This document shows, piece by piece, positions 1,099-62,393 of a stretch of DNA of 64,000 bases; positions within the stretch are counted from its first letter, which is position 1, and each line of letters opens with the position of its first letter. Source of the DNA: Isurus oxyrinchus (taxonomy: Eukaryota); the NCBI GenBank assembly GCA_026770705.1, contig JANJGN010000926.1, forward strand, positions 1 through 64,000, in the 5' to 3' direction. The position numbers and the translations under genes were made by a program. The notes beneath the pieces are model-generated. The model was not told the DNA's origin and searched no databases. It worked only from the letters and a program-made list of their open reading frames with translations.

Positions 1099-1467
1099 TT
1101 GGACTGTCACAAGAGTGGAAAGGTGACACTCCACGAGAGGTGACAGAGCAGGAAGATTCGTGTGTACAGATTCCATGTCATTACAGTTATCCATCACATT
1201 TGGAAAGCCGACCATGAGTCGGAGTCTGGTTTAATAACGAGAATCAGATTCCTGGATCTCCCATAGCCTTTCACTCCAAGGATCACAGTCACGAGTTACC
1301 ACGGTTCCACCATCGGACCCGGCTGTCTGGAGACCTGAAAGATGGCGACTGTTCCCTGATTATAAACAACATCAGACGGGAAGATGCAGGACCTTATTTT
1401 TTCAGAATAGAATTTGACAGCAGGAATAGTTACAGCTACTATCCTGTAACCCGGCTTCACATTTCTG
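1099..1467 (+). pseudogene. Gene A Siglec-like V-set exon with premature stop (TGA 1215-1217)
   Basis: ccccag/GT boundaries, 369 nt phase 1-1; CVQIPC...GDCSLII...DAGPYFFRIE...YSYY matches CD33-type V-set; paralogs at 57242 and 59541 have CGA at the stop position. Confidence 0.92.
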
Positions 1468-1939
1468 GTAAGTGCTGTGTTATAATTACTCAACAATTCA
1501 CATCCAACACTCAATGGGAAATAACACAAACTGTGACGTTTACATATTAAAATAAAACAAAGCTTATTATAACACACTGTCTGATTCTCAATAACCTGGT
1601 GATAGCTTCCAGTTCAGTCCTAAAGCAATCTCTAATACTCACTTTAATATCAATGATGAAAAGCATTAACTGTATTATCAGGTTATCCATTCCCATCAAT
1701 CTCTCCTGTCCTGTTTAAAAGTCTGACGTATCGATAAAAGAAAGATGTGCATTTCTGCTGCGCAATTTACCACCTTAGGAGGATCCAAATCCCTTCACAG
1801 CCAATGAAATTATTCCTGAATTGTGGTCACAGATGTTAAACACAGCAGGCAGTTTGTGCACAGCAAGATCCAACAAACCACAAGGTGATAAATCACCCAG
1901 ATCACTGAGGAAATGAGAAGCCAGTGAACTCAAACCTCT

Positions 1940-2075
1940 GGTCTGATGAAGAGTCATACGGACTCGAAACGTTAACCCTGTCTTCCTCTCCAGTGATACT
2001 GTCAGACCTGCTGAGTCTTTCCAGCAATTTTTGTTTTTGTTTCAGATTTCCAGCATCCACAGTATTCTGCTTTTA
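1940..2075 (+). mobile_element. Penelope-like element terminal remnant with minimal hammerhead ribozyme motif (1940-1977)
   Basis: CTGATGA-A-GAGTC-atacg-GACTC-GAAAC-GTTAACC followed by the GCTG..AGACCTGCTGAG...TTTCCAGCATC tail also seen at 63445-63541. Confidence 0.6.
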
Positions 2076-2326
2076 ACTCCAATCTCTGGTCTGAGCCTCT
2101 TCTCTCATCCAGTGTTCTCAATTCACATGTCTCGGAGTGAACGTGTATTAAGCTGAGAGACAGAAACACTACTGCCAAAGAGCAAGAAAATCTTTCCTGA
2201 TCATTGTAACCTCTCAGTTCTGATATCATCCTTGTCAAAGTGCTTTCTCTTGTGGGACTGTGGTTTCTATTTGAACTGATGCTTCACGTTATATTTCTCT
2301 AAAAGGATCCATTCTCTGTCTGTTAG

Positions 2327-2623
2327 ATTTCACAGATAAACCCACGATATTCCCTGCTGAAATTATTGCAGGAAGGCGTGTGGATGTAAGCTGCACCTTC
2401 AACACAACGTGCAATGGAACAGCAGCACCTGTCTTAACCTGGGACACTCCCACTGACGTACCTAGATCAGTCTCAAACACTGTAACTCAGCATGGTGTCA
2501 CTCTGACCTATACTTCTGTTCTGACCCTGATCCCATCACCCAAACACCACGGACACACTCTCAGCTGCAGAGTGAGATATCCATCTGTTTCATCGGAGGG
2601 GACGCTCATACTGACTGTGCAAG
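2327..2623 (+). CDS. Gene A C2-a Ig exon (Siglec domain 2), intact
   Basis: ttag/GT, 297 nt; DFTDKPTIFP...SCTFNTTC...PVLTW...SVLTLIPSPKHHGHTLSCRV resembles CD33 domain 2 including the extra interdomain Cys. Confidence 0.92.
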
Positions 2624-2842
2624 GTAAGAATGGACACCCTTCATTCTACATTAGCTAGAAAGCTCTACATAGTACATTGCAAGATCCCACAACTGCATTG
2701 TGTTTAGCAACAAATCAATAGTCTTTAACTGATACAAATTCACCTCTGACACTGCAGCAGTCCCTGAATACTGATTCTCCAACACTGCAGCACTCCCTCA
2801 GTACTGAGTCTTGTTCACAATGAAATCTTTAATTGTTCTTAG

Positions 2843-2935
2843 ATGCACCACAGAATCTCTCATTTACTTCGCTTGATATGATTAATGCTTCATCGATCAA
2901 TATAATTGAGGGGTTCATAACCATCACTGTGGAAT
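2843..2935 (+). pseudogene. Gene A C2-b copy 1, internally deleted in frame (93-nt mini-exon)
   Basis: Both splice sites retained; DAPQNLSFTSLDMINASSINIIEG joined to FITITVE, 189 nt shorter than the 282-nt copies. Confidence 0.85.
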
Positions 2936-3571
2936 GTGAGTTAATGCAAACTTCAACATCACACACACACACACACACACACACACATGCAGAAACACAC
3001 ACAATCTCAACTCATACAAGCACACACACACATGCACATACAGACACACATGTGCACACACACAAACACAAACACCCAGATCCTTATTGTACCGAAACAT
3101 GCACACACAAGCCAACACACACATACACACACAAAAACATGTGGGTTCCCTCTCCTCTCCCAGTGCTGCACTGGAGTCTCGATATCAGCTCTGAATCTGT
3201 GTTGAAGGAAGGTAAACTCCAGATCATCAAGACCCTGAACTGCATGGAGCAACCTCCTGAACAGTGAATTGTAGATTTACCTCTCAGTGTTCCATCAATC
3301 AAATACAATTCATTGCCTTTGAAGCCTTTGGGGACAGCCTGAGGATCTGTAAGGGAGTTTGCTGCATTCTAGATGGACACCTCCACTGGTGGGAGAATGT
3401 AACTGCAGTGTGACAGTTTACATAGGCAGTGCCCATTGTCAATGTGAAATAAGTTCTTATCCTGAGGGAAGGTACCTGGAAATGCATTCAGACATCAGAT
3501 ACAGAGACATGATGCATGGAGTCTTGCTGTGCACTATATTTGCTCATATTAAAATCATTCTATGTTTATAG

Positions 3572-3853
3572 ATGCACCACGGAATCTCTCAATTACTTCT
3601 CTTGGTGTGATTAACGCTTTATCGATCGATGTAATTGAGGGGAATTCTGCAGTGATAATCTGCTCTGTCGAGAGCTTCCCAGCTTCTAATCTGACGTGGT
3701 GACATCTTAATGTCCCAATGAACAGAACAAGTTCCAGCAATGAGCTGTGGTTGGTGATTCCTCACGTTACATCCAGGGACACTGGAGACTATCAGTGTGT
3801 GGCAGAGAATGAACATGGAGCAGTGGAGGGGTTCATAACCATCACTGTGGAAC
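3572..3853 (+). pseudogene. Gene A C2-b copy 2 with premature stop (TGA 3700-3702)
   Basis: 282 nt AG/GT exon; TGG TGA CAT where other copies read TGG CGA CAT. Confidence 0.9.
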
Positions 3854-3879
3854 GTGAGTTACTGCAAACTTCAACATCT

Positions 3880-3924
<45 letters not shown>

Positions 3925-4533
3925 ACACGTGCACACACATACTCATAAACATGCACACACATTCACTCATGCACAGAAATATACACAAAGAGACACTCAG
4001 ATATGCTCAAACACATACACACATGCACACACAGACACATGCGTGCATACTCACACAAACACTCTCACTTGTGCAGAAACACAAACACACACACAAACAC
4101 ACAAATGAGTTCCCTGTCCTCTCTCAGTGCTGCACTGGAGTCTCGGTGTCAGCTCCGATTCTGTGTTGAAGGAAGGTAAACTCCAGATCAACAAGACCCT
4201 GAATTGGATGGAGCAACCTCCTGAACAGAGAATTGTAGATTTACCCCTCAGTGCTCCATCGATCAAATACAATTCATTCCCGTAAATCCCTTGGCAAAAT
4301 ACTGAGGATGTGAAAGCTTCTTTCATTAAAAGTGGATAGCACCTCTACTGGTGGGAGAATGTAACTGCAGTTTGACTGTTTACATAGGCAGTGCCCATTA
4401 TAAATTTGACAGTGGAAGTTATATGGAGGGAAGGTACCCGGAATTGCATACAGACATCAGATACAGAGAGATGATGCATGGAGTCTTGCTGTAAATTGTG
4501 CTTGCTCACATTAAACACTTGATTTGTTTTTAG

Positions 4534-4815
4534 ATGCACCACAGAATCTCTCATTTACCTCTCTTGATATGATTAACGCTTCATGGATCAATATAATTGC
4601 GGGGAATTCTGCAGTGATAATCTGCTCTGTCGAGAGCTTCCCAGCTTCTAACCTGACGTGGCGACATCTTAATGTCCCAATGAACAGAACCAGTTCCAAC
4701 AATGAGCTGTGGTTGGTGATTCCTCACGTTACATCCACGGACACTGGAGACTATCAGTGTGTGGCAGAGAATGAACATGGAGCAGTGGAGGGATTCATAA
4801 CCATCACTGTGGAAC
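4534..4815 (+). CDS. Gene A C2-b copy 3 Ig exon, intact
   Basis: 282 nt AG/GT, phase 1-1; CSVESFPASNLTW...DTGDYQCVAENEHG. Confidence 0.9.
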
Positions 4816-5304
4816 GTGAGTTAACACAAACTTCAACATTACTCTCACATACACACACACACACACACACATACACACACACACAGACACATGCACACAA
4901 ACAAGCATTCATGTGCAATCCCACATGTGCACAGGTGTGTACACCTGCATGCTCACACACACAGAAGGAAACATACACAGAATCACACGTGTGCTTGCTC
5001 ACACACACACAGACATGTGTGAGTTGTCTGTTCTCCCTGTGCTGCACTGGAGTGTTGCTCCAGATTCTGCTCTGAAACACTGACGACATCAGCTGAACAA
5101 GACCCTGTATGGGACGAGCAGCCTCCTGCACAGAGAATTGTAGGTTTATCACTCAATACCCCATTATTCTAAAGCAATTCCTCCACTGTCAAATCCCTGT
5201 GAACATCCTGATGATGTGAAAGACATTTTCTTTTCTTCTAGCCCAACAGTGTCTCCTCTGGTGGAAGGCTGTAATTACAGCGTGACAGTTTACATATCCA
5301 CACG

Positions 5305-5645
5305 CAGCAAGAGCTGAGCAACACTCAGCTTGGACTGAGAAATGACAATTAATGCATCACAAGTACCAGGCAGTGATCATGTCCAACAAGAGAGAATCTA
5401 ACCATCTCCCCTTGATGTTCAGTGAGTTTACTATCACTGAATCCCCCACAATCAACATCCTGGGGGATGTTAACCAAACAACTAACTGGACCGGCCATAA
5501 ATACTGTGGCTATAGGAGCCGGTCAGAGGCTGGGAATTCTGTGGGGGTGAAAAACTAACCACCACCTCCTCAAGGGCAATTAGGGATGGGTAATAAATGC
5601 TGGTCTAGATAGATACATCCACTTCCCATGAATGTACAAAAAGAA
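5305..5645 (+). mobile_element. LINE 3' fragment, internally deleted
   Basis: Matches parts of the LINE at 20340-20570 and its tail at 21045-21125. Confidence 0.7.
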
Positions 5646-5798
5646 AAACGCTGGCAGTGACCATTATAAAAGTTGACATAGAAACTTAAAACAGGAAAGA
5701 ACCTTGAAATGCACATAGACACCAAATAGAGAGAGATGTATCATGGAGTCTTGCTGTGCACTGTGTTTGCTCACAATGAAACCTTTATTTGTATTTAG

Positions 5799-6080
5799 AT
5801 GCACCACGGAACCCATCAATTACTTCTCTTGATATGATTAATGCTTCATGGATCAATATAATTGAGGGGAATTCTGCAGTGATAATCTGCTCTGTCGAGA
5901 GCTTCCCAGCTTCTAACCTGATGTGGCGACATCTTAATGTCCCAATGAACAGAACAAGTTCCAACAATGAGCTGTGGTTGGTGATTCCTCACGTTACATC
6001 CAGGGCCACTGGAGACTATCAGTGTGTGGCAGAGAATGAACATGGAGCAGTGGAGGGGTTCATAACCATCACTGTGGAAC
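5799..6080 (+). CDS. Gene A C2-b copy 4 Ig exon, intact
   Basis: 282 nt AG/GT, open frame, both Ig Cys and Trp present. Confidence 0.9.
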
Positions 6081-6869
6081 GTGAGTTACTGCAAACNNNN
6101 NNNNNNNNNNNNNNNNNNNNNNNNNNNNNNNNNNNNNNNNNNNNNNNNNNNNNNNNNNNNNNNNNNNNNNNNNNNNNNNNNNNNNNNNNNNNNNNNNNNN
6201 NNNNNNNNNNNNNNNNNNNNNNNNTGCAAACACATACAGAGGAATATATATACACAACTCACACACACACACACATTCATGCCCACACATAGACACACAC
6301 ATGCACATTCACTCACTCTTGGACAGACGTAGACACACAGACATGCGTGCCTGCGCACACACAGATACATGTGTGCATACACACACAAGCACACTCACTT
6401 GTGCAGAAACACAAACACACACACACTCACACACATACACAAATGTGAGTTCCCTCTCCTCTCTCAGGGTGCACTGGAGTCTCGGTATCAGCTCTGATTC
6501 TGTGTTGAAGGAAGGTAAACTCCAGATCAACAAGACCCTGAATTGGATGAGCAACCTCCTGAACAGAGAATTGTAGATTTACCCCTCAGTGCTCCATCAA
6601 TCAAACATTGCCTGTCAAGCCCTTGGCGAAATCCTGAGGATATGAAAGCAAGCTTCTTTCATTCTAGATGGACAACACCTCTACTGGTGGGAGAATGCAA
6701 TTGCAGTGTGACAGTTTACATAGGCAGTGTCCATTAAAAATGTGGCATAAGACCTTATCCTGAGGGAAGTTACCTGGAAATGCATAAAGACATCAGATAC
6801 AGAGACATGATGCATGGAGTCTTGCTGTGCACTATGTTTGCTCACGTTAAAATCTTTATATGTTTTTAG

Positions 6870-6969
6870 ATGCACCACGGAATCTCTCAATCAATTCTCT
6901 TGATATGATTAACGCTTCATGGATCAATATAATTGAGGGGAATTCTGCAGTGATAATCTGCTCTGTCGA
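6870..6969 (+). pseudogene. Gene A C2-b copy 5, 5' fragment
   Basis: DAPRNLSINSLDMINASWINIIEGNSAVIICSV then jumps into intron sequence homologous to about 4880-5360; no donor. Confidence 0.85.
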
Positions 6970-7542
6970 CATAGACACACAGACAGGTGCACGTAAACAT
7001 GCGTTCATATTTAATCGCATGTCTGCACAGGTGTGTACACCTGCATGCTCACACACAGAAGGAAACATACACAGAATCACACGTGTGTTTGCTCACACAA
7101 ACACAGACATGTGTGAGTTGTCTGTTCTCCCTGTGCTGCACTGGAGTGTTGCTCCAGATTCTGCTCTGAAACACTGACGACATCAGCTGAACAAGACCCT
7201 GTATTGGACGAGCAGCCCCCTGCACAGAGAATTGTAGATTTATCACTCAATACCCCATTATTCTAAAGCAATTCCTCCACTGTCAAATCCCTGTGAACAT
7301 CCTGATGATGTGATAGACATTTTCTTTTCTTCTAGCCCGACAGTGTCTCCTCTGGTGGAAGGCTGTAATTACAGCGTGACAGTTTACATATCCACATGCA
7401 GCAAGAGCTGAACAACACTCAGCTTGGGCTGAGAAATGACAATTAATGTTCATGCCGCACAAGTACCAGGGAGAGCTGTTCCTTGTATTGACCCTTGGGA
7501 TTGTTTATCTCAACCTGATAGGGCAGAGGGGGCCCAGGTTGT

Positions 7543-7609
7543 GACTATCAGAGTGTGGCAGAGAATGAACATGGAGCAGTGGAGGGGTTCATAACCATCA
7601 CTGTGGAAT
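7543..7609 (+). pseudogene. Gene A C2-b copy 6, 3' fragment
   Basis: [22 protein letters not shown] plus GTGAGT donor; Cys codon changed to Ser; 5' part missing. Confidence 0.8.
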
Positions 7610-8427
7610 GTGAGTGTGGAGATACATTTGTTTGTTTGTTGTCTCCGTGGTCTCCGTGGAGCCATTGGGATCGTGTTGTTTTTAATCCAGTTTTCTTCAA
7701 TCCTCGCTCAGTCCACGTTATCCACACACCCAATTTTTCCTCTCCCTTTCTGTTTTTGCTCTCAGTTTCTCCTTCATTGGTTGTGAGGACAAGGCTGTCA
7801 GGTCTTCGTTTCCAATCTCCATACTTGACGACCTTTCGCTCTCTAACTGTCCTGAACAACCCTTTTAATTGCTGAACTTCTCATTCTTTAATTGATAAAT
7901 ATTATATATAAACGTTACATGGATTACTTTGAAATGCAACACTTGTATTCATAAATAGCTTAGAAATGACTAAAATTCAACAGTCAATGAAGCATTATCG
8001 AAGTAAGCTCACTGCTGTAAAGGAGGAAACACAGGTACTGATTTGTACACAGCAAGATCCCACAAACCACCGTGTCTTAATGACCTGATAGTCGATTATT
8101 TCAATGAGGTTGGTTGTTTAATGTGTAGAGAGACTACATACCCTTTAGGGAGGGAAGCATGTCTCGATGTGGATGTGACTCCAGTCTCAGACACCAACAT
8201 GGTTAACTCTTACCTGCCCTCTGAACTGGTCTCCCAGTTTGGGACAAACCAGTGGTTCAGGAACAAGACCCCCCACCACCTTCTCAAGGGGAAACTAGGG
8301 ATGGACAATAAATGTCAGCATTGCCCGAGAATGAGTATTTAAACATTGAGTGAGTGTATCGCTTCTCGAGATACATCGGAGCATCATTGTAAACCTGTAG
8401 TGCAGTAATTAATGGCTGTTTTTACAG

Positions 8428-8524
8428 GTAGAGACTCCAGTAAATGGACAGTAGGATTGTTCACGGCTGGGATCATGTTGAGTGTGTTCCTGGCTGGAAT
8501 CTTCATCTTCATCTGTGTGAGAAA
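8428..8524 (+). CDS. Gene A transmembrane exon (uncharged, inhibitory type)
   Basis: tttttacag/GTAAGT; RDSSKWTVGLFTAGIMLSVFLAGIFIFICVRK; phase 1-2. Confidence 0.9.
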
Positions 8525-8649
8525 GTAAGTCTGAAGATTTAACTTGATTTTAATATAAACATTTGCTTAGGACTAATTGGACAGTTTTTACAAAGGGCCA
8601 GCACAGGCACGATGGGCTGAGTGGCTTCCTCCTGAGCTGTGAGATTTAA

Positions 8650-10618: not shown

Positions 10619-10867
10619 GGTAAACAGAACGTGCTGATTACTGAGCCCCGGAACACAACCAGAGACACAACTAGCGAGGGGGAGACCCCAGCTCCCCGGG
10701 ATCTCTCTGAAGGTCCAGTGAGAGGCAATGCTGGACATGGAATCCCTGACAATCCCAACGACCTTCTCTACGCCAATCCCCAAGTCTTCAGGGTGCCCAG
10801 TGGTGATGGGTCTGTCCACAGGGAAGAGGAGACGGAATACGCACAGATCAGATTCAAGCGAAACTGA
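10619..10867 (+). CDS. Gene A terminal cytoplasmic exon: degenerate ITIM (LLYANP) plus ITSM (TEYAQI)
   Basis: ctctgtag acceptor, phase 0, open to TGA; two tyrosine motifs spaced as in CD33-related Siglecs. Confidence 0.9.
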   Translation, partial: GKQNVLITEPRNTTRDTTSEGETPAPRDLSEGPVRGNAGHGIPDNPNDLLYANPQVFRVPSGDGSVHREEETEYAQIRFKRN

Positions 10868-14680: not shown

Positions 14681-14764
14681 CTGATCCTACTTGTTCTGTT
14701 CTTATATTCTTATACAGACACAGGGTTTACTGACAGTGCACAGCAAAGTGCTGTTCACTCACTT

Positions 14765-15539: not shown

Positions 15540-15621
15540 GAGAAAGACAGCGATGGAGGAGAGAGTTTCAGGGACCAGTGACATTGTATTGACCCCCAGT
15601 CCACTCTCTGTGAAGCACCAG
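15540..15621 (+). CDS. Unit B cytoplasmic exon 1 (no ectodomain or TM exon between it and the promoter module)
   Basis: Paralog of 9248-9329, splice sites intact, ATG at 15553 in GCGATGG context. Confidence 0.8.
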
Positions 15622-15834
15622 GTACAGGAGCTGTTTACACTCACACCAAAGCTTCAACCTCAGTGTGTAGACAACACGTATACCAGATTCTCAGCTGGGT
15701 TACACACAGATATCGCCCTGTGAAGTCAGCAATGGCGCAGTGGTCAGCACTGTCTCTCGCTCCCAGGCTCTGTCTCCCTCCATCACTCGCTCTTTGACCT
15801 TAAACATGAACACAATAATGACGAGGCACCTGAT

Positions 15835-18440
15835 GTCAGTAGTGAGGGAGTGCTGCACTGTCAGAGGGTCAGTAGTGAGGGAGTGCTGCACTGTCGAAAG
15901 GTCAGTACTGAGGGAGTGCTGCACTTTCGGAGGGTCATTACTGAGGGTGTGTTGCACTGTCAGAGGGTCAGTACTGAGGGAGTGCTGCACTGTCAGAGGG
16001 TCAGTATTGAGGGAGTGCTGCACTGTCAGAGGGTCAGTACTGAGGGAGTACTGCACTGTCAGCGGGTCAGTAGTGAGGGAGTGCTGCACTGTCAGATGAT
16101 CAGTATTGAGGGAGTGCTGCACTGTCAGAGGGTCAGTACTGAGGGAGTGCTGCACTGTCAGAGGGTCAGTAGTGAGGGAGTGCTGCACTGTCAGAGGGTC
16201 AGTAGTGAGGGAGTGCTGCACTGTCGGAGGGTCAGTACTGAGGGAGTGCTGCATTGTCAGAGGGTCAGTATTGAGGGAGTGCTGCACTGTCAGAGGGTCA
16301 GTATTGTGGGAGTCCAGCACTGTTGGAGGGTCAGTACTGAGGGAGTGCTGCACTGTCAGAGGGTCAGTATTGAGGGAGTGCTGCACTGTCAGAGGGTCAG
16401 TACTGAGGGAGTGCTGCACTGTCAGAAGGTCAGTACTGAGGGAGTGCTGCACTGTCAGAGGGTCAGTACGGAGGGAGTGCTGCACTGTCAGAGGGTCAGT
16501 ACTGAGGGAGTACTGCACTGTCAGAGGGTCAGTAGTGAGGGAGTGCTGCACTGTCAGAGGGTCAGTATTGAGGGAGTGCTGCACTGTTGGAGGGTCAGTA
16601 CTGAGGGAGTGTTGCACTGTCAGAGTGTCAGTACTGAGGGAGTGTTGCACTGTCAGAGGGTCAGTATTGAGGGAGTGCTGCACTGTCAGAGGGTCAGTAC
16701 TGAGGGAATGCTGCACTGTTGGAGGGTCAGTATTGAGGGAGTGCTGCACTGTCAGAGGGTCAGTATTGAGGGAGTGCTGCACTGTCGGAGGGTCAGTACT
16801 GAGGGAGTGCTGCACTGTCAGAGGGTCAGTACTGAGGGAGTGCTGCACTGTCAGAGGTTCAGTAGTGAGGGAGTGCTGCACTGTCAGAGAGTCAGTAGTG
16901 AGGGAGTGCTGCACTGTCGGAGGGTCAGTACTGAGGGAGTGCTGCACTGTCAGAGGGTCAGTATTGAGGGAGTGCTGCACTGTCAGAGGGTCAGTATTGA
17001 GGGAGTGCAGCACTGTTGGAGGGTCAGTACTGAGGGAGTGCTGCACTGTCAGAGGGTCAGTATTGAGGTAGTGCTGCACTGTCAGAGGGTCAGTACTGAG
17101 GGAATGCTGCACTGTCAGAAGTTCAGTACTGAGGGAGTGCTGCACTGTCAGAGGGTCAGTACTGAGGGAGTGCTGCACTGTCAGAGGGTCAGTAGTGAGG
17201 GAGTGCTGCACTGTCGGAGGGTCAGTATTGAGGGAGTGCTGCACTGTCAGAGGGTCAGTAGTGAGGGAGTGCTGCACTGTCGGAGGGTCAGTACTGAGGG
17301 AGTGCTGCACTGTCAGAGGGTCAGTATTGAGGGAGTGCTGCACTGTCAGAGGGTCAGTATTGAGGGAGTGCAGCACTGTTGGAGGGTCAGTACTGAGGGA
17401 GTGCTGCACTGTCAGAGGGTCAGTATTGAGGGAGTGCTGCACTGTCAGAGGGTCAGTACTGAGGGAGTGCTGCACTGTCAGAGGGTCAGTACGGAGGGAG
17501 TGCTGCACTGTCAGAGGGTCAGTACTGAGGGAGTACTGCACTGTCAGCGGGTCAGTAGTGAGGGAGTGCTGCACTGTCAGAGGATCAGTATTGAGGGAGT
17601 GCTGCACTGTTGGAGGGTCAGTACTGAGGGAGTGTTGCACTGTCAGAGTGTCAGTACTGAGGGAGTGTTGCACTGTCAGAGGGTCAGTATTGAGGGAGTG
17701 CTGCACTGTCAGAGGGTCAGTATTCCGGGAGTGCTGCACTGTTGGAGGGTCAGTATTGAGGTAGTGCTGCACTATCAGAGGGTCAGTATTGAGGGAGTGC
17801 TGCACTGTCGGAGGGTCAGTACTGAGGGAGTGCTGCACTGTCAGAGGGTCAGTACTGAGGGAGTGCTGCACTGTCAGAAGTTCAGTAGTGAGGGAGTGCT
17901 GCACTGTCAGAGGGTCAGTAGTGAGGGAGTGCTGCACTGTCGGAGGGTCAGTACTGAGGGAGTGCTGCACTGTCAGAGGGTCAGTATTGAGGGAGTGCAG
18001 CACTGTTGGAGGTTCAGTACTGAGGGAGTGCTGCACTGTCAGAGGGTCAGTATTGAGGGAGTGCTGCACTGTCAGAGGGTCAGTACTGAGGGAGTGCTGC
18101 ACTGTCAGAAGGTCAGTAATGAGGGAGTGCTGCACTGTCAGAGGGTCAGTACTGAGGGAGTGCTGCACTGTCAGAGGGTCAGTACGGAGGGAGTGCTGCA
18201 CTGTCAGAGGGTCAGTACTGAGGGAGTGCTGCACTGTTGGAGGGTCAGTATTGAGGGAGTGCTGCACTGTCAGAGGGTCAGTATTGAGGGAGAGCTGCAC
18301 TGTCGGAGGGTCAGTACTGAGGGAGTGCTGCACTGTCAGAGGGTCAGTACTGAGGGAGTGCTGCACTGTCGGAGGGTCAGTATTGAGGGAGTGATGCACT
18401 GTCAGAGGGTCAGTACTGAGGGAGTGCTGCACTGTTGGAG
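15835..18440 (+). repeat. 33-bp minisatellite (GAGGGAGTGCTGCACTGTCAGAGGGTCAGTACT), about 79 units, intronic
   Basis: Direct inspection; 11-aa periodicity in the spurious 890/910-aa ORFs. Confidence 0.97.
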
Positions 18441-18625
18441 TGCGATAGAGATTAAATTATTAAGAGAGAGAGAAAGCGAGAGAGAAAGAGAGACAGAGAA
18501 AGAGAGTGAAAAAAAGGCTTAAACCCACTGAGACACGACTGACACTAATGAGGCTGCACAATAATTTAACCCTATCAGTGCCAGTAAATGATGTGAGGAT
18601 GTCTTCTGTTTCCATTTCTCTGTAG

Positions 18626-18874
18626 GGTAAACAGAACGTGCTGATTACTGAGCCCCGGAACACAACCAGAGACACAACTAGTGAGGGGGAGACCCCAGCT
18701 CCCCGGGATCTCTCTGAAGGTCCAGTGGGAGGCGATGTTGGACATGGGAACCCCGACAATACCGACGAGCTTCTCTACGCCAACATCAACTTTTCAAAGC
18801 TGCCCGGCGGTGACAGGACTGTGCACAGGAGCGAGGACACGGAATACACACAGATCAGGTTCCAGAAAAACTGA
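18626..18874 (+). CDS. Unit B terminal cytoplasmic exon: ITIM (LLYANI) plus ITSM (TEYTQI)
   Basis: Acceptor intact, open to TGA; paralog of 10619-10867. Confidence 0.88.
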   Translation, partial: GKQNVLITEPRNTTRDTTSEGETPAPRDLSEGPVGGDVGHGNPDNTDELLYANINFSKLPGGDRTVHRSEDTEYTQIRFQKN

Positions 18875-53462: not shown

Positions 53463-53837
53463 TTGGACTATCACAAGTGTGGAAAGGTGACACTCCAGGA
53501 GAGGTGACAGCGCAGGAAGGTTCGTGTGTACAGATTCCATGTAATTACAGTTATCCATCATATTTAGTAGCGAGATCACCAGTCGGAATCTGGTATATGA
53601 GAAGGAATTGGGAAAAATGGAATGAACGGTCTATAGCCTTTCACTCCAAGGATCATAATCGCGAGTTACCACAGTTCCACCATCGGACCCGGCTGTCTGG
53701 AGACCTGAAAGATGGCGACTGTTCCCTGATTATAAACAACATCAGACGGGAAGATGCAGGATATTATTTATTCAGCCTAGAATTTGACAACAGGAATAGA
53801 TACAACGACCGTCCTGAAACCCAGCTTCACGTTTCTG
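53463..53837 (+). CDS. Gene E V-set exon 1, intact frame, essential Arg replaced by Ser
   Basis: ccctag/GTAAGT, 375 nt; CVQIPC and GDCSLII kept; DAGYYLFSLE (AGC 53774-53776) versus DAGPYFFRIE. Confidence 0.92.
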
Positions 53838-55835: not shown

Positions 55836-56389
55836 ATAAGTTGTTGCCCTTTGACCCTCGACCCCAGATTGAGTCTTATTTTTGAGGGAATGTACAACCT
55901 GCTTAGATTTCTGACCAAAGTGTCATTTGATTATTTTTATTGAGCGAATGCCAAGCCCCGATACCGAGCGAGAGCCTCCTCATTTGCTGAGTTTAAGGTG
56001 ATGAGTCAGCCCCTTAGTCCGTAGAGGGGATTCTCCTCGGTAATGTACAGCCTTGTTTGTGTCTCTCCACAAGCGCATGAGGGATTTGTACAGAGGCTGC
56101 AGCGCTGGAGGGGGTCTGCACAGGGGTCCTGGCCTGTCCTGAGCTGGTTTTAGCAAGGACCACTCTGGCCTTGGCAGCTGAAAGCCAGCCATTGGACAGA
56201 CAGGGCCTGTCACAAGGAGCCTGTTAGTCACTCCCCCCCGTGTCTCCTGTGCTCGGATCCAGACCATGTTGGCTGGTGGATCTGGCTCAGGAAGGGTCCT
56301 CCCCATGGGACCCCCAGATGGAAGGTGGGTCGAGCGGGTCAGTCACTTGCATGTTTATTCTGCAGCTTTAATATTTTAAGAAGGTAAGA

Positions 56390-57183
56390 ATGTAGGAACA
56401 TAAGAAATAGGGACAGGAGCAGGCCATTCGGCCCCTCGAGCCTGCCCTCGCTGATCTGGTTGTGGCCTTAACTCCATTTTCCTGCCTGTCCCCCAAACCC
56501 TTGACTCCCTTGTCGATCAAAAACCTGCCTCACTCAGCCTTGAGTCTATTCAATGGCCCAGCCTCCACTGCTCTCTGGGGAAGGGAATTCCACAGGCTAG
56601 CGCCCCTCTGAGAGAGGAAATTCCTCCTCATCTCAGTCTTAAATGGGAGAGTCCTCATTCCGAAACTGTGCTCCCTGGTTCTAGATTCCCCCACGAGGGG
56701 GAAACATCCTCCCAGCATCCACCCTGTCAAGCCCCCTCGGAATTGGATATGTTTCAATAAGGTCACCCCTCATTCTTCTAAACTCCAATGGATACAGGCC
56801 CAACCTGCTCAACATTTCCTCACAGGACAAACCCTTTAATCCCAGGAATCAGCCCAGTGAAGCTTCTCTGAACTGCCTGTACACAATGATCCTGTTACAA
56901 TCTCACTAACGCCCTGTGCAGCTGTTGCAAGACTTCCCTCCTTTTATACTCCATCCCTTTGCAATAAAGGCCAACATTCCACTTGCCTTCCTCATTCTGT
57001 GGTGTTCCTGAATGCTGACTTTCTGTGATTCATGTACAAGGACACCCAGATCCCTCTGTACTGCATTCTGCAGCCTGTCTCCAGTTAAATAATATTCTGA
57101 TTTTCTATTCTTCCTGCCAAAATAATTTGTTGCCATTCTCCTCAGTATTGACCATCCCCCCAATTCAGCCTCATCTGTAAATT
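56390..57183 (-). mobile_element. CR1-type LINE 3' fragment
   Basis: Minus strand QRDLGVLVHESQK, KASGMLAFIAKG, FKTEMRRNF.SQR...LWNSLPQ. Confidence 0.88.
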
Positions 57184-57241
57184 TTGAGTCTAGTGGATCC
57201 ACAAGCCATCCAGAGATAAATATTGAGATTTCTCTCCCCAG

Positions 57242-57610
57242 TTGGACTGTCACAAGAGTGGAAAGGTGACACTCCACGAGAGGTGACAGCTCAGGAAGGT
57301 TCGTGTGTACAGATTCCATGTCATTACAGTTATCCATCGTGTCTGGAAAACCAACCGCGAGGTGGACTCTGGTTTAATAATGAGAAACAGATTCCCTGGG
57401 CTCCCATTGCCTTTCACTCCAAGGATCACAGTCACGAGTTACCACGGTTCCGCCATCGGACCCGGCTGTCTGGAGACCTGAAAGATGGCGACTGTTCCCT
57501 GATTATAAACAACATCAGACGGGAAGATGCAGGACCTTATTTTTTCAGAATAGAATTTGACAATGGTCCGAGACATAACTATTACCCTGTAACCCGGCTT
57601 CACGTTTCTG
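57242..57610 (+). CDS. Gene E V-set exon 2, intact, essential Arg present
   Basis: ccccag/GTAAGT, 369 nt; EWKG, CVQIPC, GDCSLII, YFFRIE. Confidence 0.93.
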
Positions 57611-58689
57611 GTAAGTGCTGTGTTATAATTACTCAACAATTCACATCCAACACTCAATGGGAAATAACACAATCTGTGACGTTTACATATTAACACAAAA
57701 CACAGGTTATTATAACACACTGTCTGATTCTCAATAACCTGGTGATAGCTTCCAGTTCAGTTCTAAAGCAACCTCTAATACTCACTTTAATATCAATGAT
57801 TAAATGTATTGACTGTGTCTATCAATGTTATCAGTTTATCCACTCCCATCAATCTCTCAAATCCTGTCTTGAAGTCTGACATATCGACAGAAGAAAGATT
57901 TACATTTCTACAGCGCCTTTCACCACCCTAGAGTTCCTACCCTAAATCTCTCCCTCTCCCTCTTCCTCTCCCTCTCTCTCTCTCTCTGTCTCTTTATCTC
58001 TGTCTCTCCATAACACCGACCTCTTCTGGTCAGCTGTCGCTAATATCTACACGTGTCTGGGTGACATACTTTATTTTATGACGCTCCTGTGTAGCACCTT
58101 GAGGTGATTTGTCATGTTAAAGTTGTTGTGAAAATATAAGTTGTTGCCCTTTGACTCTCGACCCCAGATCGAGTCTTATTTTTGAGGGAATGTACAACCT
58201 CCTTAGATTTCTGACCAAAATGTCATTTGATTATTTTTATTGAGCGAATGCCAAGCCCCGATACCGAGCGAGAGCCTCCTCATTTGCCGAGTTTAGGGTG
58301 ATGAGTCAGCACCTTAGTCTGTAGAGGGGATTCTCCTCGGTAATGAGCAGCCTTGTTTGTGTCTCTCCACAAGCGCATGAGGGGTTTGTACAGAGGCTGC
58401 AGCGCTGGAGGGGGTCTGCACAGGGGTCCTGGCCTGTCCTGAGCCGGTTTTAGCAAGGACCACTCTGGCCTTGGCAGCTGAAAGCCAGCCATTGGACAGA
58501 CGGGGCCTGTCACAAGGAGCCTGTTAGTCACTCCCCCCAGTGTCTCCTGTGCTCAGATCTAGACCATGTTGGCTGGTGGATCTGGCTCAGGAAGGGTCCT
58601 CCCCATGGGACCCCCAGATGGAAGGTGGGTCGAGCGGGTCAGTCACTTGCATGTTTATTCTGCAGCTTTAATATTTTAAGATGGTAAGA

Positions 58690-59482
58690 ATGTAGGAACA
58701 TAAGAAACGGGGACAGGAGCAGGCCATTCGGCCCCTCGAGCATGCTCTCACTGATCTGGTTGTTGCCTTAACTCCATTTTCCTGCCTGTCCCCCAAACCC
58801 TTGACTCCCTTGTCGATCAAAAACCTGCCTCACTCAGCCTTAAGTCTATTCAATGGCCCAGCCTCCACTGCTCTCTGGGGAAGAGAATTCCACAGGCTAG
58901 CGCCCCTCTGAGAGAGGAAATTCCTCCTCATCTCAGTCTTAAATGGGAGAGCACTCATTCCAAAACTGTGCTCCCTGGTTCTAGATTCCCCCACGAGGGG
59001 GAAACATCCTCCCAGCATCCACCCTGTCAAGCCCCCTCGGAATCGGATATGTTTCAGTAAGGTCAGCCCTCATTCTTCTAAACTCCAATGGATACAGGCC
59101 CAACCTGCTCAACATTTCCTCACAGGACAAACCCTTTAATCCCAGGAATCAGCCCAGTGTAGCTTCTCTGAACTGCCTGCACACAATGATCCTGTTAAAA
59201 TCTCACTAACGCCCTGTGCAGCTGTTGCAAGACTTCCCTCCTTTTATACTCCATCCCTTTGCAATAAAGGCCAACATTCCACTTGCCTTCCTCATTCCAT
59301 GGTTTTCCTGAATGCTGACTTTCTGTGATTCATGTACAAGGACACCCAGATCCCTCTGTACTGCATTCTGCAGCCTGTCTCCAGTTAAATAATATTCTGA
59401 TTTTCTATTCTTCCTGCCAAAATAATTTGTTGCCATTCTCCTCAGTATTGACCATCCCCCAATTCAGCCTCATCTGTAAATT
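58690..59482 (-). mobile_element. CR1-type LINE 3' fragment (duplicate)
   Basis: Copy of 56390-57183. Confidence 0.88.
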
Positions 59483-59540
59483 TTGAGTCTAGTGGATCCA
59501 CAAGCCATCCAGAGATAAATATTGAGATTTCTCTCCCCAG

Positions 59541-59909
59541 TTGGACTGTCACAAGAGTGGAAAGGTGACACTCCACGAGAGGTGACAGCTCAGGAAGGTT
59601 CCTGTGTACAGATTCCATGTCATTACAGTTATCCATCGTGTCTGGAAAACCAACCGCGAGGTGGAGTCTGGTTTAATAATGAGAAACAGATTCCCTGGGC
59701 TCCCATTGCCTTTCACTCCAAGGATCACAGTCACGAGTTACCACGGTTCCACCATCGGACCTGGCTGTCTGGAGACCTGAAAGATGGCGACTGTTCCCTG
59801 ATTATAAACAACATCAGACGGGAAGATGCAGGACCTTATTTTTTCAGAATAGAATTTGACAATGGTCCGAGACATAACTATTACCCTGTAACCCGGCTTC
59901 ACGTTTCTG
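59541..59909 (+). CDS. Gene E V-set exon 3, intact, essential Arg present
   Basis: Differs from V exon 2 by three residues (L/V, R/H, R/W). Confidence 0.93.
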
Positions 59910-60376
59910 GTAAGTGCTGTGTTATAATTACTCAACAATTCACATCCAACACTCAATGGGAAATAACACAAACTGTGATGTTTACATATTAACACAAAAC
60001 ACAGGTTATTATAACACACTGTCTGATTCTCAATAACCTGATGATAGCTTCCAGTTCAGTCCTAAAGCAACCTCTAATACTTACTTTAATATCAATGATT
60101 AAATGTGTTGACTGTGTCTATCAATGTTATCAGTTTATCCACTCCCATCAATCTCTCAAATCCTGTCTTGAAGTCTGACATATCGACAGAAGTAAGATTT
60201 ACATTTCTACAGCGCCTTTCACCACCCTAGAGTTCCCACCCTAAACCTCTCCCTCTCCCTCTTCCTCTCCCTATCTCTCTCTCTCTCGCTGTGTCTCTCT
60301 GTCTCTTTCTCTCTGTCTTTCCATAACACCGACCTCTTCTGGCCAGCTGTCACTAATATCTCCACATGTGTCACAG

Positions 60377-60664
60377 ATAAACCCACGATATTCCCTGCTG
60401 AAATTATTGCAGGAAAGCGTGTGGATGTAAGCTGCACCTTCAACACAACGTGCAATGGAACAGCAGCATCTGTCTTAACCTGGGACACTCCCACTGACGT
60501 ACCTGGATCAGTCTCAAACACTGTAACTCAGCATGGTGTCACTCTGACCTATACTTCTGTTCTGACCCTGACCCCATCACTCAAACACCACGGACACACT
60601 CTCAGCTGCAGAGTGAGATATCCATCTGTTTCATCGGAGCGGACCCTCATACTAACTGTGCAAG
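60377..60664 (+). CDS. Gene E C2-a exon; native acceptor deleted, in-frame cryptic CAG acceptor at 60374-60376
   Basis: DKPTIFPAE...TLILTVQ open, donor GTAAGA intact. Confidence 0.78.
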
Positions 60665-60987
60665 GTAAGAACGGACACCCTTCATTCTACATCAGCACTC
60701 CCTCAGCGCTGACCCTCTGACAGTGCAGCCCGTTCTCAGTGTCCACATTCTCATGCCTCTCAAAGTGCTTCACAGTCGATAGAAGTTAACTGATCTTTAT
60801 TTGATTGTTGCTGAATGAAGAGACAAGCTGTCTAAACTTTACATCTCACACACATTATTTTCCATGGCAACACCTCCTCCAATCAGAGACCACTTGCTGA
60901 TTAACCAGCACTCTCTTCCCTTTAAATATAAATTGTTGTTCACTTTCTGTTGGTAAACCTGCAATCTGCCTTGTTGAGTCCGGTCCT

Positions 60988-61139
60988 GACATCTGAATAT
61001 CACAATGAACAGAACAAGTTCCAACAATGAGCTGTGGTTGGTGATTCCTCACATTACATCCAGGGACACTGGAGACTATCAGTGTGCTCAGAGAATGAAC
61101 ATGGAGCAGTGGAGGGGTTCATAACCATCACTGTGGAAC
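60988..61139 (+). pseudogene. Gene E C2-b 3' remnant with 1-bp deletion; 5' half missing
   Basis: MNRTSSNNELWLVIPHITSRDTGDYQC then TGTGCTCAGAG versus TGTGTGGCAGAG; no acceptor. Confidence 0.85.
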
Positions 61140-62253
61140 GTTAGTTAAGGCAAACTTCAACATCTCTCTCAGATTGAAACACTACAAAAACACACATAAA
61201 TATCCAGCCTTAAATAGACACCTGCAGACAAACAATCCCACATCTATGAGCACACACAAAGGCACACTCACAAACAAACACACTAGCACATACTCCCCTG
61301 TGGATTACCTGACCTCCCTCAGTGCTGCACCGGAGAGTTGACCTGGATTCTGGGATTTGTGTTCCCTTTCATATTTATGGAAGAATATGGAAATTGCAAA
61401 GTCTATTACAGACACTCAGATGCACAGAGATACTCACAGATACTCTCTGCCTCTCCAACTCTCTATCCTACTTTAAGAACCTTCCTGAAATCTAACTCTT
61501 TGACCAGTCACCTGTCCCAATTCCTCCTTACGTGATTTTGTGTGAAATTTTGTTTGAGTATCTGAGAGTAAGAGGGAAGTGGAGAGGTTTAGGAAGGGAA
61601 TTCCTGTTGCTGAAAAGCTTACATCAAGTTCTCAGCTTTCCAGTGCCCATTTTTCACATGATGTCCATGTTCATAATGGGGATTGCCTATGTAAACGTCA
61701 CGCTGTAGTTACACTCTCCCACCAGTGGTAGCACGGTAACACTTAACCCTTGCATCTCCAAGCTTTTCAAGCAATTTCACTTCCTAATTTCCTACTATTC
61801 ACCTCAACCATTCCCTGTGGGAGCGAGTTCCATATTCTCCCCTCTCTCTGGGTAAAGATTGGAACTGTTTATTAAGCGGGGGGTGTAAGTCCGTGGGGGA
61901 GTCCATCTCGATCCTGCCCGATTCGCACACACGTCCGAGATGGATTTTCACCCGGCACTAAACGTTTCCAGAATTTTCTACAGCACAATCCTGTACACAG
62001 CAATAGAGAGAAACATTGGACAGGGAGTCCAACAGCACAATGATCCATTCTCACCAATGTTCCACGCTAAGGAGAAAGTTCCGATTGTCCACTCTTAGAG
62101 TGTTTACAATGAAAACATTCATTCCACATTGAATCCCAGTGGATGGGTCAATATTACAGCAAATGTTGCAGTGATATGAAGTTTGATTGTTCAGCCAGAG
62201 TGAGAGATTGAAAGCGGAGAGTCAGTGATGATTTCTTTCTGTGTGTTCTCTAG

Positions 62254-62393
62254 ACAGTGGAGGAGAGATTCTGCACGTGATCCTGATCCTGGGAATACGA
62301 GCTGTGATATTCCTTGTGGCTGTGGTTATCACTATCACTGGAGTCTGTGTCTGGGAGAGACAAACAGTGAAAGGAAGTCGACAGACTGTTTGA
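62254..62393 (+). CDS. Gene E activating-type transmembrane/short-tail exon with intramembrane Arg
   Basis: Pyrimidine tract plus TAG at 62251-62253; phase-1 reading DSGGEILHVILILGIRAVIFLVAVVITITGVCVWERQTVKGSRQTV*; not shown in the ORF track in this frame. Confidence 0.8.

What the first reader, a model, noticed from the sequence alone, without database searches (positions are those of the whole stretch)
1099..62393. Paired activating/inhibitory CD33-related-Siglec-like receptor cluster, probably in a cartilaginous fish
Seen: near-identical leader, V and C2 exons are attached to two unrelated membrane modules. One is an uncharged TM with an ITIM-like/ITSM tail (8428-10867, 15540-18874, 36662-39412). 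The other is a TM with an internal Arg and a 12-residue tyrosine-free tail (62254-62393). Established: the V-set Cys pattern (B-E intrasheet disulfide plus interdomain Cys), F-strand YFFR and proximal-ITIM/distal-TEYxxI tail define CD33-related Siglecs, and mammalian Siglec-5/14 and 11/16 are paired receptors of this design. Inference: this is a lineage-specific paired sialic-acid receptor system; I cannot verify whether it has been described.
Basis: partly seen in the sequence, partly recalled or inferred. Interest (0 to 1): 0.9.

Follow-up and report, generated by a model that had tools for sequence, protein, structure and literature searches.

The report
Shark paired Siglec receptor gene cluster
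This stretch of a shark genome holds a cluster of Siglec-type immune receptor genes whose near-identical sugar-binding ends are joined to either a 'brake' tail or an 'accelerator' membrane anchor, a design known from mammals but, in the papers I searched, not described for cartilaginous fish.

Summary
The window carries repeated leader, V-set, C2 and membrane exons with correct splice sites and phases. V59 matches solved Siglec V domains best (Siglec-5, E 1.3e-14; the top 17 hits are all Siglecs). It keeps the B-E and interdomain cysteines and the YFFR arginine.

There are two membrane modules:
- an uncharged TM exon plus two tail exons ending in LLYAN(I/P)...TEYxQI;
- the exon 62254-62393, with an in-membrane Arg and a 12-residue tyrosine-free tail.

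Contigs of four runs join the C2 exon to 62254 at a GT..AG intron. RefSeq models in white shark, two catsharks and bamboo shark show the same leader-V-C2-TM(Arg) build.

Caveats:
- All three inhibitory units in this window are broken: a nonsense codon, an orphan tail, and a unit with a deleted V, a lost donor and a frameshift.
- The activating unit is intact, but the expressed contigs differ from it at several sites, so they may come from a near-identical copy.
- Grouping with tetrapod CD33-related Siglecs is favoured (bootstrap 78), but a MAG-like grouping is not rejected.

The family is already auto-named Siglec/CD33-like in many elasmobranch genomes. This scan has also noted it on other pieces of this genome. 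I class it as a new member of a known kind.

The parts
1099..1467 (+). Gene 1 V-set exon (V1), with an in-frame TGA at 1215-1217 where the other copies have CGA
   Evidence: ag|..|gt, 369 nt, 90% DNA identity to V59; YFFRIE kept; nonsense codon seen in alignment A1
2327..2623 (+). Gene 1 first C2 exon (C2a), acceptor ttag|ATTTCACAG
   Evidence: Pfam C2-set_2 for the 60376 copy
3572..6080 (+). Gene 1: three full C2b (I-set-like) exons at 3572-3853, 4534-4815 and 5799-6080. Remnants lie outside this span at 2842-2934, 6869-6969 and 7543-7608
   Evidence: each 282 nt, phase 1-1. Gap 6097-6224 lies in the following intron
8428..8524 (+). Gene 1 uncharged TM exon
   Evidence: matches the TM of white-shark inhibitory model P0013
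9248..9329 (+). Gene 1 cytoplasmic exon 1 (KRKTAMEERVSGTRDIALTPSPLSVKHQ)
10619..10867 (+). Gene 1 last exon: LLYANPQVF (ITIM-like, Pro at +3) and TEYAQI (ITSM), then stop
15540..18874 (+). Orphan tail unit: cyt1 15540-15621 and cyt2 18626-18874 (canonical ITIM LLYANI plus TEYTQI). No TM or Ig exon of its own. A 33-bp minisatellite fills the intron
28867..29906 (+). Remnant of a third membrane module: TM-like exon 28867-28962 and cytoplasmic exon 29822-29906. Copies of the latter lie at 14819-14911, 31960-32052, 43534-43626 and 45291-45383
   Evidence: 94-100% identity to Cetorhinus models P0174/P0175; tail type as in P0019
30350..30389 (+). Leader exon copy (MIRKSYFLLSLLQ + 1 nt, donor G|gtaat)
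   Evidence: (loose end before 59539)
32503..32542 (+). Leader exon copy in front of gene 3
33226..39405 (+). Gene 3, a broken inhibitory unit. V reduced to its last 39 nt (33226-33264). C2a 33993-34289 with the donor GT changed to GA. TM 36662-36758. cyt1 37728-37809. cyt2 39160-39405 with a 2-bp deletion before the ITIM and the stop lost
   Evidence: Gaps 34549-35583 lie in its middle intron
44067..44106 (+). Leader exon copy
45828..45867 (+). Leader exon copy, the nearest one upstream of V53 (7.6 kb away)
53463..53837 (+). V53: a diverged V-set exon in which the key arginine is replaced (YYLFSLE)
   Evidence: the white-shark counterpart in P0170 keeps Arg
57242..57610 (+). V57: intact V-set exon with YFFRIE and an extra Cys (YPSCLEN)
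   Evidence: It lies in a 2.3-kb tandem duplication, 55700-58056 vs 58002-60369, 96.7% identical
59541..59909 (+). V59: intact V-set exon, the one next to C2a
   Evidence: RNA-type contigs show a leader->V joint and exon-peaked depth
60377..60664 (+). Activating unit C2a exon. The usual acceptor (ag|ATTTCACAG) is lost because the upstream sequence was replaced at 60370. An in-frame substitute, cacag|AT, sits at 60376/60377
   Evidence: The donor joint to 62254 is
60988..61140 (+). C2b remnant: 5' half missing, no acceptor, 1-nt frameshift at 61086. Skipped by the observed splice
   Evidence: (T inserted at 61086 in the contigs; joint skips it)
62254..62393 (+). Activating TM exon: in-membrane Arg, 12-residue Tyr-free tail, stop at 62391-62393
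   Evidence: joint 60664->62254, GT..AG, in 4 runs; 78-93% identical in 8 models of 4 shark species

Best explanation
The window is part of a large, tandemly duplicated cluster of Siglec-family receptor genes in a lamniform shark. One shared ectodomain cassette (leader, one or more sialic-acid-type V-set domains, a Siglec-type first C2 domain, optional further Ig domains) is combined with alternative membrane modules.

(a) Inhibitory module: an uncharged TM plus a tail with an ITIM or ITIM-like motif and a TEYxxI ITSM. By analogy with CD33-related Siglecs, these motifs would be phosphorylated and recruit SHP-type phosphatases.

(b) Activating module: a single exon giving a TM with a buried Arg and a 12-residue tail. 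By analogy with Siglec-14/-16 and other paired receptors, the Arg would pair with an acidic residue of an ITAM adaptor (DAP12 or FcR-gamma type).

Shown here: the exon anatomy, Siglec identity of the domains, splicing of C2a to the Arg-TM exon, conservation of both builds in other sharks, and intermixing of activating and inhibitory ectodomains on a tree.

Inferred: sialic-acid binding, phosphatase recruitment and adaptor pairing.

In this window the three inhibitory units are pseudogenes or fragments. The activating unit (V53, V57, V59, C2a, TM-Arg) is open-reading but rearranged.
For: - Siglec identity of V59: Pfam V-set plus Ig_CD22. In the PDB sequence search the top 17 hits are all Siglecs, Siglec-5 at 1.3e-14, with both B-strand Cys, the E-strand Cys and YFFR aligned.
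- C2a aligns to CD33 domain 2 with the C-x6-C pair.
- The AlphaFold model of the catshark orthologue P0187 (pLDDT 91.6) hits CD33, MAG, Siglec-10, Siglec-5 and CD22 before any other fold.
- Splice: joint 60664->62254, GT..AG, in X1, X2, X6 and X12, with depth 10-100 times higher on exons than on introns. One 850-nt contig carries C2a, the TM-Arg exon and 3' UTR.
- The same runs show a C2b exon running on into the start of the uncharged TM exon, and a leader->V joint.
- Orthologous full models with leader-V-C2a-TM(Arg): P0187 and P0203 (S. canicula), P0184, P0166 and P0170 (C. carcharias), P0006 and P0082 (S. torazame), P0022 (Chiloscyllium punctatum). Inhibitory V-C2a-TM-cyt1-cyt2: P0013 and P0153.
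- On the V+C2a tree the membrane types are interspersed by taxon. The activating label needs at least 3-4 changes. P0187 (activating) is sister to P0168 (inhibitory) of the same species at SH-aLRT 95.
Against: - The runs are only guessed to be RNA, and they are contigs.
- The expressed contigs carry ATT at the C2a acceptor. They also differ from the window at 60469 and 60572 in all depth and at 62337 in part of it. They may therefore come from a near-identical paralogue or allele rather than from this copy.
- No leader lies within 7 kb of the activating unit's V exons.
- All inhibitory units here are broken.
- The assembly has eight gaps and recent tandem duplications, so some rearrangements could be assembly errors.
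- No binding or signalling was tested.
- No shark adaptor sequence was available to test pairing.
Confidence: 0.85

Rival explanations
1. Gene graveyard. Everything in this window, including the activating unit, is non-functional debris of unequal crossing-over. The expressed paired receptors are encoded by near-identical copies elsewhere in the genome.
For: - V1 nonsense codon.
- Gene 3 has a deleted V, a donor changed from GT to GA, a 2-bp deletion and a lost stop.
- The tail unit at 15540-18874 is an orphan.
- The activating unit lost the family's normal C2a acceptor, and its C2b is a 5'-truncated, frameshifted remnant.
- The contigs carry bases that differ from the window at 60368-60370, 60469 and 60572.
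- The scan noted the same family on many other pieces of this genome.
Against: - V57, V59, C2a and the TM-Arg exon are open and have good splice sites.
- An in-frame substitute acceptor exists at 60376/60377.
- In X1, part of the depth at 62337 carries the window's base.
- The white-shark models P0166 and P0170 show the same partial-V + V + C2a + TM-Arg layout.
- Contigs drop rare variants, so absence of the window's bases proves nothing.
Confidence: 0.35
2. Not CD33-related. The family is an elasmobranch-specific expansion from a MAG-like or undifferentiated ancestral Siglec. The ITIM/ITSM tail and the activating partner would then have arisen or been recruited independently, by convergence with mammalian pairs.
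For: - The shark family is its own 100%-supported clade, not nested in the tetrapod CD33r clade.
- The split uniting it with the CD33r-type clades has only UFBoot 78.
- Shark+MAG-like is not rejected (AU p 0.21), and a short tree search even preferred it.
- PDB scores for CD33r members (51-58 bits) are close to MAG (50.6 bits).
- An unchecked scan note places a hepcidin-like gene just beyond the window. From my own knowledge, HAMP neighbours MAG and CD22 in human.
Against: - The best careful tree puts sharks with tetrapod CD33r and a teleost clade, away from the MAG-like and CD22-like clades.
- The best PDB sequence and fold hits are CD33r members.
- The tail pattern xxYA(S/N)(I/V)xFSK ... TEYx(E/Q)I(K/R) is shared with turtle, mammal and teleost members.
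Confidence: 0.35
3. The exon at 62254 is a chance ORF or belongs to a different gene.
For: It lies 1.6 kb after C2a, behind a dead C2b remnant. It has no Pfam match.
Against: - A GT..AG joint from C2a into it is seen in four runs.
- It is 78-93% identical at the C-terminus of eight Siglec models in four shark species.
- A search restricted to this module found only Siglec-family proteins.
Confidence: 0.02
4. The V domains no longer bind sialic acid and recognise another ligand, for example a protein, as some Arg-mutated mammalian Siglecs do.
For: - V53 has lost the key Arg.
- The C-C' and F-G regions differ strongly between the V copies.
- No binding data exist.
Against: - Arg is kept in V1, V57 and V59. 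It is nearly invariant (90% or more) in the 50-protein alignment, as are the Cys and Trp framework residues.
- The motif is present in most homologues.
Confidence: 0.15

Closest known systems
Mammalian paired CD33-related Siglecs (Siglec-5/Siglec-14, Siglec-11/Siglec-16)
   Same: - Near-identical V and first C2 domains are attached either to an ITIM + ITIM-like/ITSM tail or to a TM with a basic residue and a short tail.
- Ectodomains are homogenised within a species.
- The genes sit in a tandem cluster with many pseudogenes.
- The essential Arg sits in YFFR. The B-E disulfide and the interdomain Cys are present.
   Different: - The shark family forms its own clade, so pairing arose or was maintained separately from the primate pairs.
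- The activating module is one conserved exon shared across three shark orders.
- Tandem V exons give double or triple V domains.
- V identity between the partners in this window is 87-90%, not above 99%.
- The adaptor is unknown.
CD33 (Siglec-3), two-domain V-C2 Siglec
   Same: It is the best structural match of the catshark orthologue (TM-score 0.76 over the target, 30% identity). The build is the same V + C2 + TM + tail with two tyrosine motifs.
   Different: CD33 has no activating partner with a charged TM. In two of the three copies here the shark proximal motif is LLYANP, with Pro at +3.
MAG (Siglec-4) and CD22 (Siglec-2), the 'conserved' Siglecs known in fish
   Same: The V-set fold and the Arg are shared. 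MAG scores only slightly below the CD33r members. The RefSeq pipeline names several family members 'MAG-like'.
   Different: MAG-like and CD22-like proteins, including a white-shark CD22-like protein, form separate clades. MAG has no ITIM/ITSM pair and no activating twin.
RefSeq gene models of other elasmobranchs (for example XP_038670873 S. canicula 'Siglec-8', XP_041037179 C. carcharias 'CD33-like', and the S. canicula 'Siglec-14 isoform X2' model P0187)
   Same: They are direct homologues at 70-97% identity, with the same exon build and the same two membrane modules.
   Different: They are automatic names only. Several models are chimaeras of neighbouring units. I found no paper that describes them.

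Membership tests
Siglec family (I-type sialic-acid lectins) | N-terminal V-set domain most similar to Siglec V domains | tested here: met
   Pfam V-set 5.8e-11 and Ig_CD22 4.5e-09. The 17 best PDB sequences are all Siglecs, E 1.3e-14 to 1.9e-11.
Siglec family (I-type sialic-acid lectins) | Unusual cysteine pattern: B-strand to E-strand intrasheet disulfide, no F-strand Cys, plus an extra B-strand Cys paired with a Cys in domain 2 | tested here: met
   GSCVQIPC and GDCSL align with the Siglec-5/-7 cysteines, and YFFR stands in place of YxC. C2a SCTFNTTC aligns with CD33 TCSVSWAC. The bonds themselves are not shown.
Siglec family (I-type sialic-acid lectins) | Essential F-strand arginine | tested here: met
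   YFFRIE in V1, V57 and V59 aligns with the Siglec-5 and Siglec-7 YFFR motif. It is nearly invariant (90% or more) in alignment A4. It is lost in V53, which reads YYLFSLE.
Siglec family (I-type sialic-acid lectins) | Two-domain fold like solved Siglec ectodomains | tested here: met
   The model of orthologue P0187 (pLDDT 91.6) has CD33, MAG, Siglec-10, CD22 and Siglec-5 as its top 31 ranks. The test was done on the catshark orthologue, not on a joined window model.
Siglec family (I-type sialic-acid lectins) | Sialic-acid binding | not testable with these tools
   This needs Fc-fusion binding with sialidase and R->A controls.
CD33-related Siglec subgroup | V/C2 domains group with CD33r rather than with Siglec-1, CD22, MAG or Siglec-15 | tested here: inconclusive
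   The careful tree has a split {shark + tetrapod CD33r + teleost clade} against {MAG-like, CD22-like, two others} at UFBoot 78 / SH-aLRT 91. Shark+MAG-like is not rejected, AU p 0.21. No named Siglec-1 or Siglec-15 reference was in the tree.
CD33-related Siglec subgroup | Membrane-proximal ITIM plus distal ITIM-like/ITSM (TEYxxI/V) about 20 residues apart | tested here: met
   18626-18874 reads LLYANINF...(23 residues)...TEYTQI. 10619-10867 reads LLYANPQVF...TEYAQI, with a non-canonical proximal motif. The pattern is shared with turtle, mammal and teleost members.
CD33-related Siglec subgroup | Location in the cluster syntenic with human 19q13.3-13.4 | not testable with these tools
Paired activating/inhibitory receptors | Closely similar ectodomains on an ITIM-bearing form and on a short-tailed form with a charged TM residue, both expressed | tested here: met
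   C2a is 97% and V 90% identical between the units. The C2a->TM(Arg) joint is seen, and a C2b exon runs on into the start of the uncharged TM exon, in the same runs. Both forms exist as models in the white shark. Expression is shown at family level only.
Paired activating/inhibitory receptors | Association of the charged TM with an ITAM adaptor | not tested
   No shark DAP12 or FcR-gamma sequence was in hand.

The most novel reading that the evidence does not exclude
CD33r-type Siglecs, with the ITIM/TEY-ITSM tail exon, already existed in the common ancestor of cartilaginous and bony vertebrates. The shark, teleost and tetrapod clades would then be co-orthologous, independently expanded descendants. 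The published view that fish lack CD33-related Siglecs would be wrong. A dedicated Arg-TM activating cassette would have been maintained in galeomorph sharks since their orders split.
Probability: 0.4. Interest if true: 0.7.

Novelty: new member of a known kind. Interest (0 to 1): 0.5.

Why it matters
Paired Siglecs are thought to arise when hosts counter pathogens that exploit inhibitory Siglecs. They have been studied almost only in primates and rodents.

Papers state that fish genomes lack CD33-related Siglecs (PMC7226832). A 2026 preprint repeats that only the conserved Siglecs have clear fish orthologues (10.64898/2026.08.25.746757).

This shark family has both arms, expressed, and conserved across three shark orders. 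That gives an independent, very old instance of the same arms-race design. It also gives a concrete system for asking when the ITIM/ITSM Siglec tail and adaptor-coupled Siglecs arose.

The value is tempered. The genes are already auto-annotated as Siglecs in many elasmobranch genomes, and this particular window holds mostly broken copies.

Tried and rejected
- Leader search by ATG plus a hydrophobic ORF plus a phase-1 donor near the V exons found nothing useful. The leader was instead found from an RNA loose end.
- PDB labelling of tree clades at E<=1e-25 returned nothing for three queries, so those calls were wasted.
- The FastTree and 'quick' trees gave unstable deep nodes. A constrained tree beat the quick tree by 17.6 log-likelihood units, so only the careful tree is used.
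- A search with the Arg-TM module alone (P0184 residues 224-270) found only Siglec-family proteins. The earlier scan note that other receptor families reuse the exon was therefore not reproduced within that length range.
- Pairwise tail similarity to tetrapod CD33r members is weak (E 0.07-0.3 in a 260-protein set). I use it only as a motif resemblance.
- Complex prediction was not used because no adaptor sequence was available.
Exons were searched one by one by reference.
- One joined row (V59 + C2a of the window) was built inside the local tree script only. The conclusions from that tree rest on the database proteins.

Full report
**What is in the window**

Six-frame reading, self-BLAST and alignment show a set of repeated exons, all on the + strand, with canonical ag|..|gt borders. 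The Ig exons are in the phase 1-1 arrangement typical of Ig-superfamily genes. The other exons join in frame.

The exon types are:
- a 40-nt leader (MIGKSYFLLSLLQ + 1 nt);
- a 369-375-nt V-set exon;
- a first C2 exon (C2a), 288-297 nt depending on the acceptor;
- a 282-nt I-set-like exon (C2b);
- an uncharged TM exon;
- two cytoplasmic exons;
- one exon at 62254-62393 that encodes a TM with an internal Arg plus 12 residues.

They form these units:
- Gene 1, 1099-10867: V, C2a, three full C2b exons plus remnants, TM, cyt1, cyt2.
- An orphan tail, 15540-18874.
- Remnants of a third membrane module, 28867-29906.
- Gene 3: leaders at 30350 and 32503, then 33226-39405.
- An activating unit: leaders at 44067 and 45828, V53, V57, V59, C2a at 60377-60664, a dead C2b remnant, and the TM-Arg exon at 62254-62393.

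Units 839-15000 and about 31900-43700 are a segmental duplication, up to 98% identical. V57 and V59 lie in a 2.3-kb tandem duplication.

**Gaps**

None of the eight N runs lies in a called exon.
- They interrupt introns of gene 1 (6097-6224) and gene 3 (34549-35583), so the number of C2b exons there is uncertain.
- The gap at 27254-27382 may hide the 5' part of the C2b remnant at 27537.
- The remaining gaps lie in intergenic repeats.
- The activating unit is gap-free.

Continuity across the gaps cannot be shown, and nothing below depends on it.

**Identity of the domains**

- V59, V57 and V53 match Pfam V-set and the CD22-type first Ig domain.
- Against all PDB sequences, the 17 best hits to V59 are Siglecs. 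They run Siglec-5, -7, -8, -10, CD33, then MAG and sialoadhesin, with E 1e-14 to 2e-11. Siglec-15 and CD22 score much lower.
- The alignments place GSCVQIPC, GDCSL and YFFRIE on the Siglec cysteines and on the essential arginine.
- C2a aligns with CD33 domain 2, including the C-x6-C pair.
- C2b is a generic I-set domain.
- A high-confidence model of the catshark orthologue P0187 (pLDDT 91.6) has CD33, MAG, Siglec-10, CD22 and Siglec-5 as its first 31 structural matches. Nectins follow.

**Organism and relatives**

HMMER against 1.8 billion representatives gave 1218 hits. The closest are RefSeq models of many sharks, rays and skates. They are named 'Siglec-5/7/8/10/11/12/13/14', 'CD33-like' or 'MAG-like'. 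Window exons are 94-97% identical to Carcharodon carcharias and Cetorhinus maximus proteins. The source is therefore a lamniform shark.

**The activating exon belongs to the Siglec gene**

Contigs of four runs (three samples, three studies, two organism labels) were laid on 59400-62700. The runs are only guessed to be RNA.
- Depth on exons is 10-100 times that on introns.
- In all four runs there is a joint 60664->62254 across a GT..AG intron. It skips the C2b remnant.
- One 850-nt contig carries C2a, the TM-Arg exon and 3' UTR.
- Loose ends gave the leader sequence, which led to the four leader exons.
- Other loose ends showed a V->V joint in a paralogue, and a C2b exon running on into the start of the uncharged TM exon.

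The same leader-V-C2a-TM(Arg) build exists as models in four species:
- S. canicula: P0187, auto-named Siglec-14, and P0203.
- C. carcharias: P0184, P0166 and P0170.
- S. torazame: P0006 and P0082.
- Chiloscyllium punctatum: P0022.

White-shark P0013 and P0153 give the inhibitory build V-C2a-TM-cyt1-cyt2 and confirm the splice pattern used here.

**Pairing**

Between the activating and inhibitory units of the window, C2a is 97% identical in DNA and V is 90% identical. On a V+C2a tree of 51 elasmobranch models, the three membrane types intermix by taxon. The activating label needs at least 3-4 changes. A catshark activating form is sister to a catshark inhibitory form at SH-aLRT 95. The Arg-TM exon itself is 78-93% identical across three shark orders. 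The module is therefore old, while the ectodomains are exchanged or homogenised within lineages. That is the signature of paired receptors.

**State of the copies here**

- Gene 1 has CGA->TGA in V.
- Gene 3 keeps only 39 nt of V. Its C2a donor is GA, and its last exon has a 2-bp deletion and no stop.
- The 15540 unit lacks TM and Ig exons.
- The activating unit is open, but homology upstream of C2a breaks at 60370. This destroys the family's ag|ATTTCACAG acceptor. An in-frame cacag|AT acceptor remains.
- The expressed contigs carry ATT at that position. They also differ from the window at 60469 and 60572. At 62337 both bases are seen in X1.

Expression is therefore shown for the family, not proven for this copy.

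**CD33-related or not**

A V-only tree left the deep nodes unresolved. The short V+C2 search was shown to be unreliable.

The careful V+C2 tree (69 proteins, 221 columns) recovers seven groups:
- the shark family (100/100);
- tetrapod CD33r, labelled by marmot, turtle, frog and caecilian names;
- a teleost clade whose best PDB hit is CD33;
- a MAG-like clade;
- a CD22-like clade;
- two others.

A split at 78/91 unites the shark, tetrapod CD33r and teleost groups. An AU test does not reject shark+MAG-like (p 0.21).

The tail pattern YA(S/N)(I/V)xFSK...TEYx(E/Q)I(K/R) is shared with turtle, mammal and teleost members. Orthology with CD33r is thus favoured but not established. The design works like CD33r pairs either way.

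**Literature**

Searches combining Siglec with cartilaginous fish, shark, elasmobranch, Chondrichthyes or species names found no description of this family. PMC7226832 states that fish genomes lack CD33-related Siglecs. A 2026 preprint repeats that only the conserved Siglecs have clear teleost orthologues. The library searched is limited to open papers and preprints.

**Earlier scan notes**

The same family was noted on many other pieces of this genome, with similar conclusions by follow-up agents.

What I checked here:
- the Arg-less V53;
- the extra Cys in V57 and V59, which sit behind another V exon, and its absence in V1 and V53;
- the three V exons in series.

What I did not confirm:
- I could not reproduce the claim that other receptor families reuse the Arg-TM exon.
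- I could not check the hepcidin-like neighbour, which lies outside the window.

**Limits**

One joined row was used only inside the local tree script.
- Adaptor pairing, phosphatase recruitment and sugar binding are inferences from established knowledge of Siglec-5/14, Siglec-11/16 and CD33.

Noticed in passing
window 53463-53837: V53 has Ser where the essential sialic-acid Arg sits (YYLFSLE). It differs most in the C-C' and F-G regions. The white-shark counterpart (P0170) keeps Arg.
   Followed up: partly
window 57242-57610 and 59541-59909: V57 and V59 carry an extra Cys (YPSCLEN) that V1 and V53 lack. This fits an earlier scan note that V domains placed behind another V carry it.
   Followed up: partly
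window 55700-60369: A 2.3-kb unit with a V exon is tandemly duplicated (2.03 copies, 96.7% identity). Its end at 60369/60370 coincides with the loss of the normal C2a acceptor.
   Followed up: partly
window 28867-29906; also 14819-14911, 31960-32052, 43534-43626, 45291-45383: These are remnants of a third membrane/tail module: a TM 76% identical in DNA to the inhibitory TM exon, and a cytoplasmic exon SSTGRGHSAQAERVGSSSPGEQSDRSW. In other sharks this tail ends in ..DIYxx..VYVNV. The cytoplasmic exon is repeated about 440 bp upstream of each leader exon.
   Followed up: partly
window 15835-18435, 25797-26615 (inverted), 63125-63445: A 33-bp minisatellite, up to 79 copies, fills the intron between the two tail exons of the orphan unit and recurs elsewhere. 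It creates long false ORFs on both strands.
   Followed up: no
window 59549 (loose end in X2): A contig joins the end of a V exon directly to a V exon that starts CTGAACCC.. (AEPSQEW, as in P0184). Double-V transcripts therefore exist in a paralogue.
   Followed up: no
window 61086: Contigs in all four runs carry an extra T here (all depth at this place in three runs, about a third in X1), so the window's C2b remnant is frameshifted relative to the expressed C2b exons.
   Followed up: no
proteins P0126, P0106, P0130, P0140 (teleosts): These uncharacterised teleost proteins have Siglec V domains and tails of the form xxYA(N/S)IxxSK...TEYTxVK. They form a clade near tetrapod CD33r. The statement that fish lack CD33-related Siglecs may also be outdated for bony fish.
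   Followed up: partly
window 12788-14608, 20000-20488, 41503-43110, 54058-54489: Reverse-transcriptase (LINE-like) ORF fragments lie between the receptor units. The copies at 12707-14997 and 41423-43712 are 98.3% identical.
   Followed up: no
run X16: A run labelled as a coral metatranscriptome holds 6% of the words of the shark stretch. I have no explanation for it.
   Followed up: no
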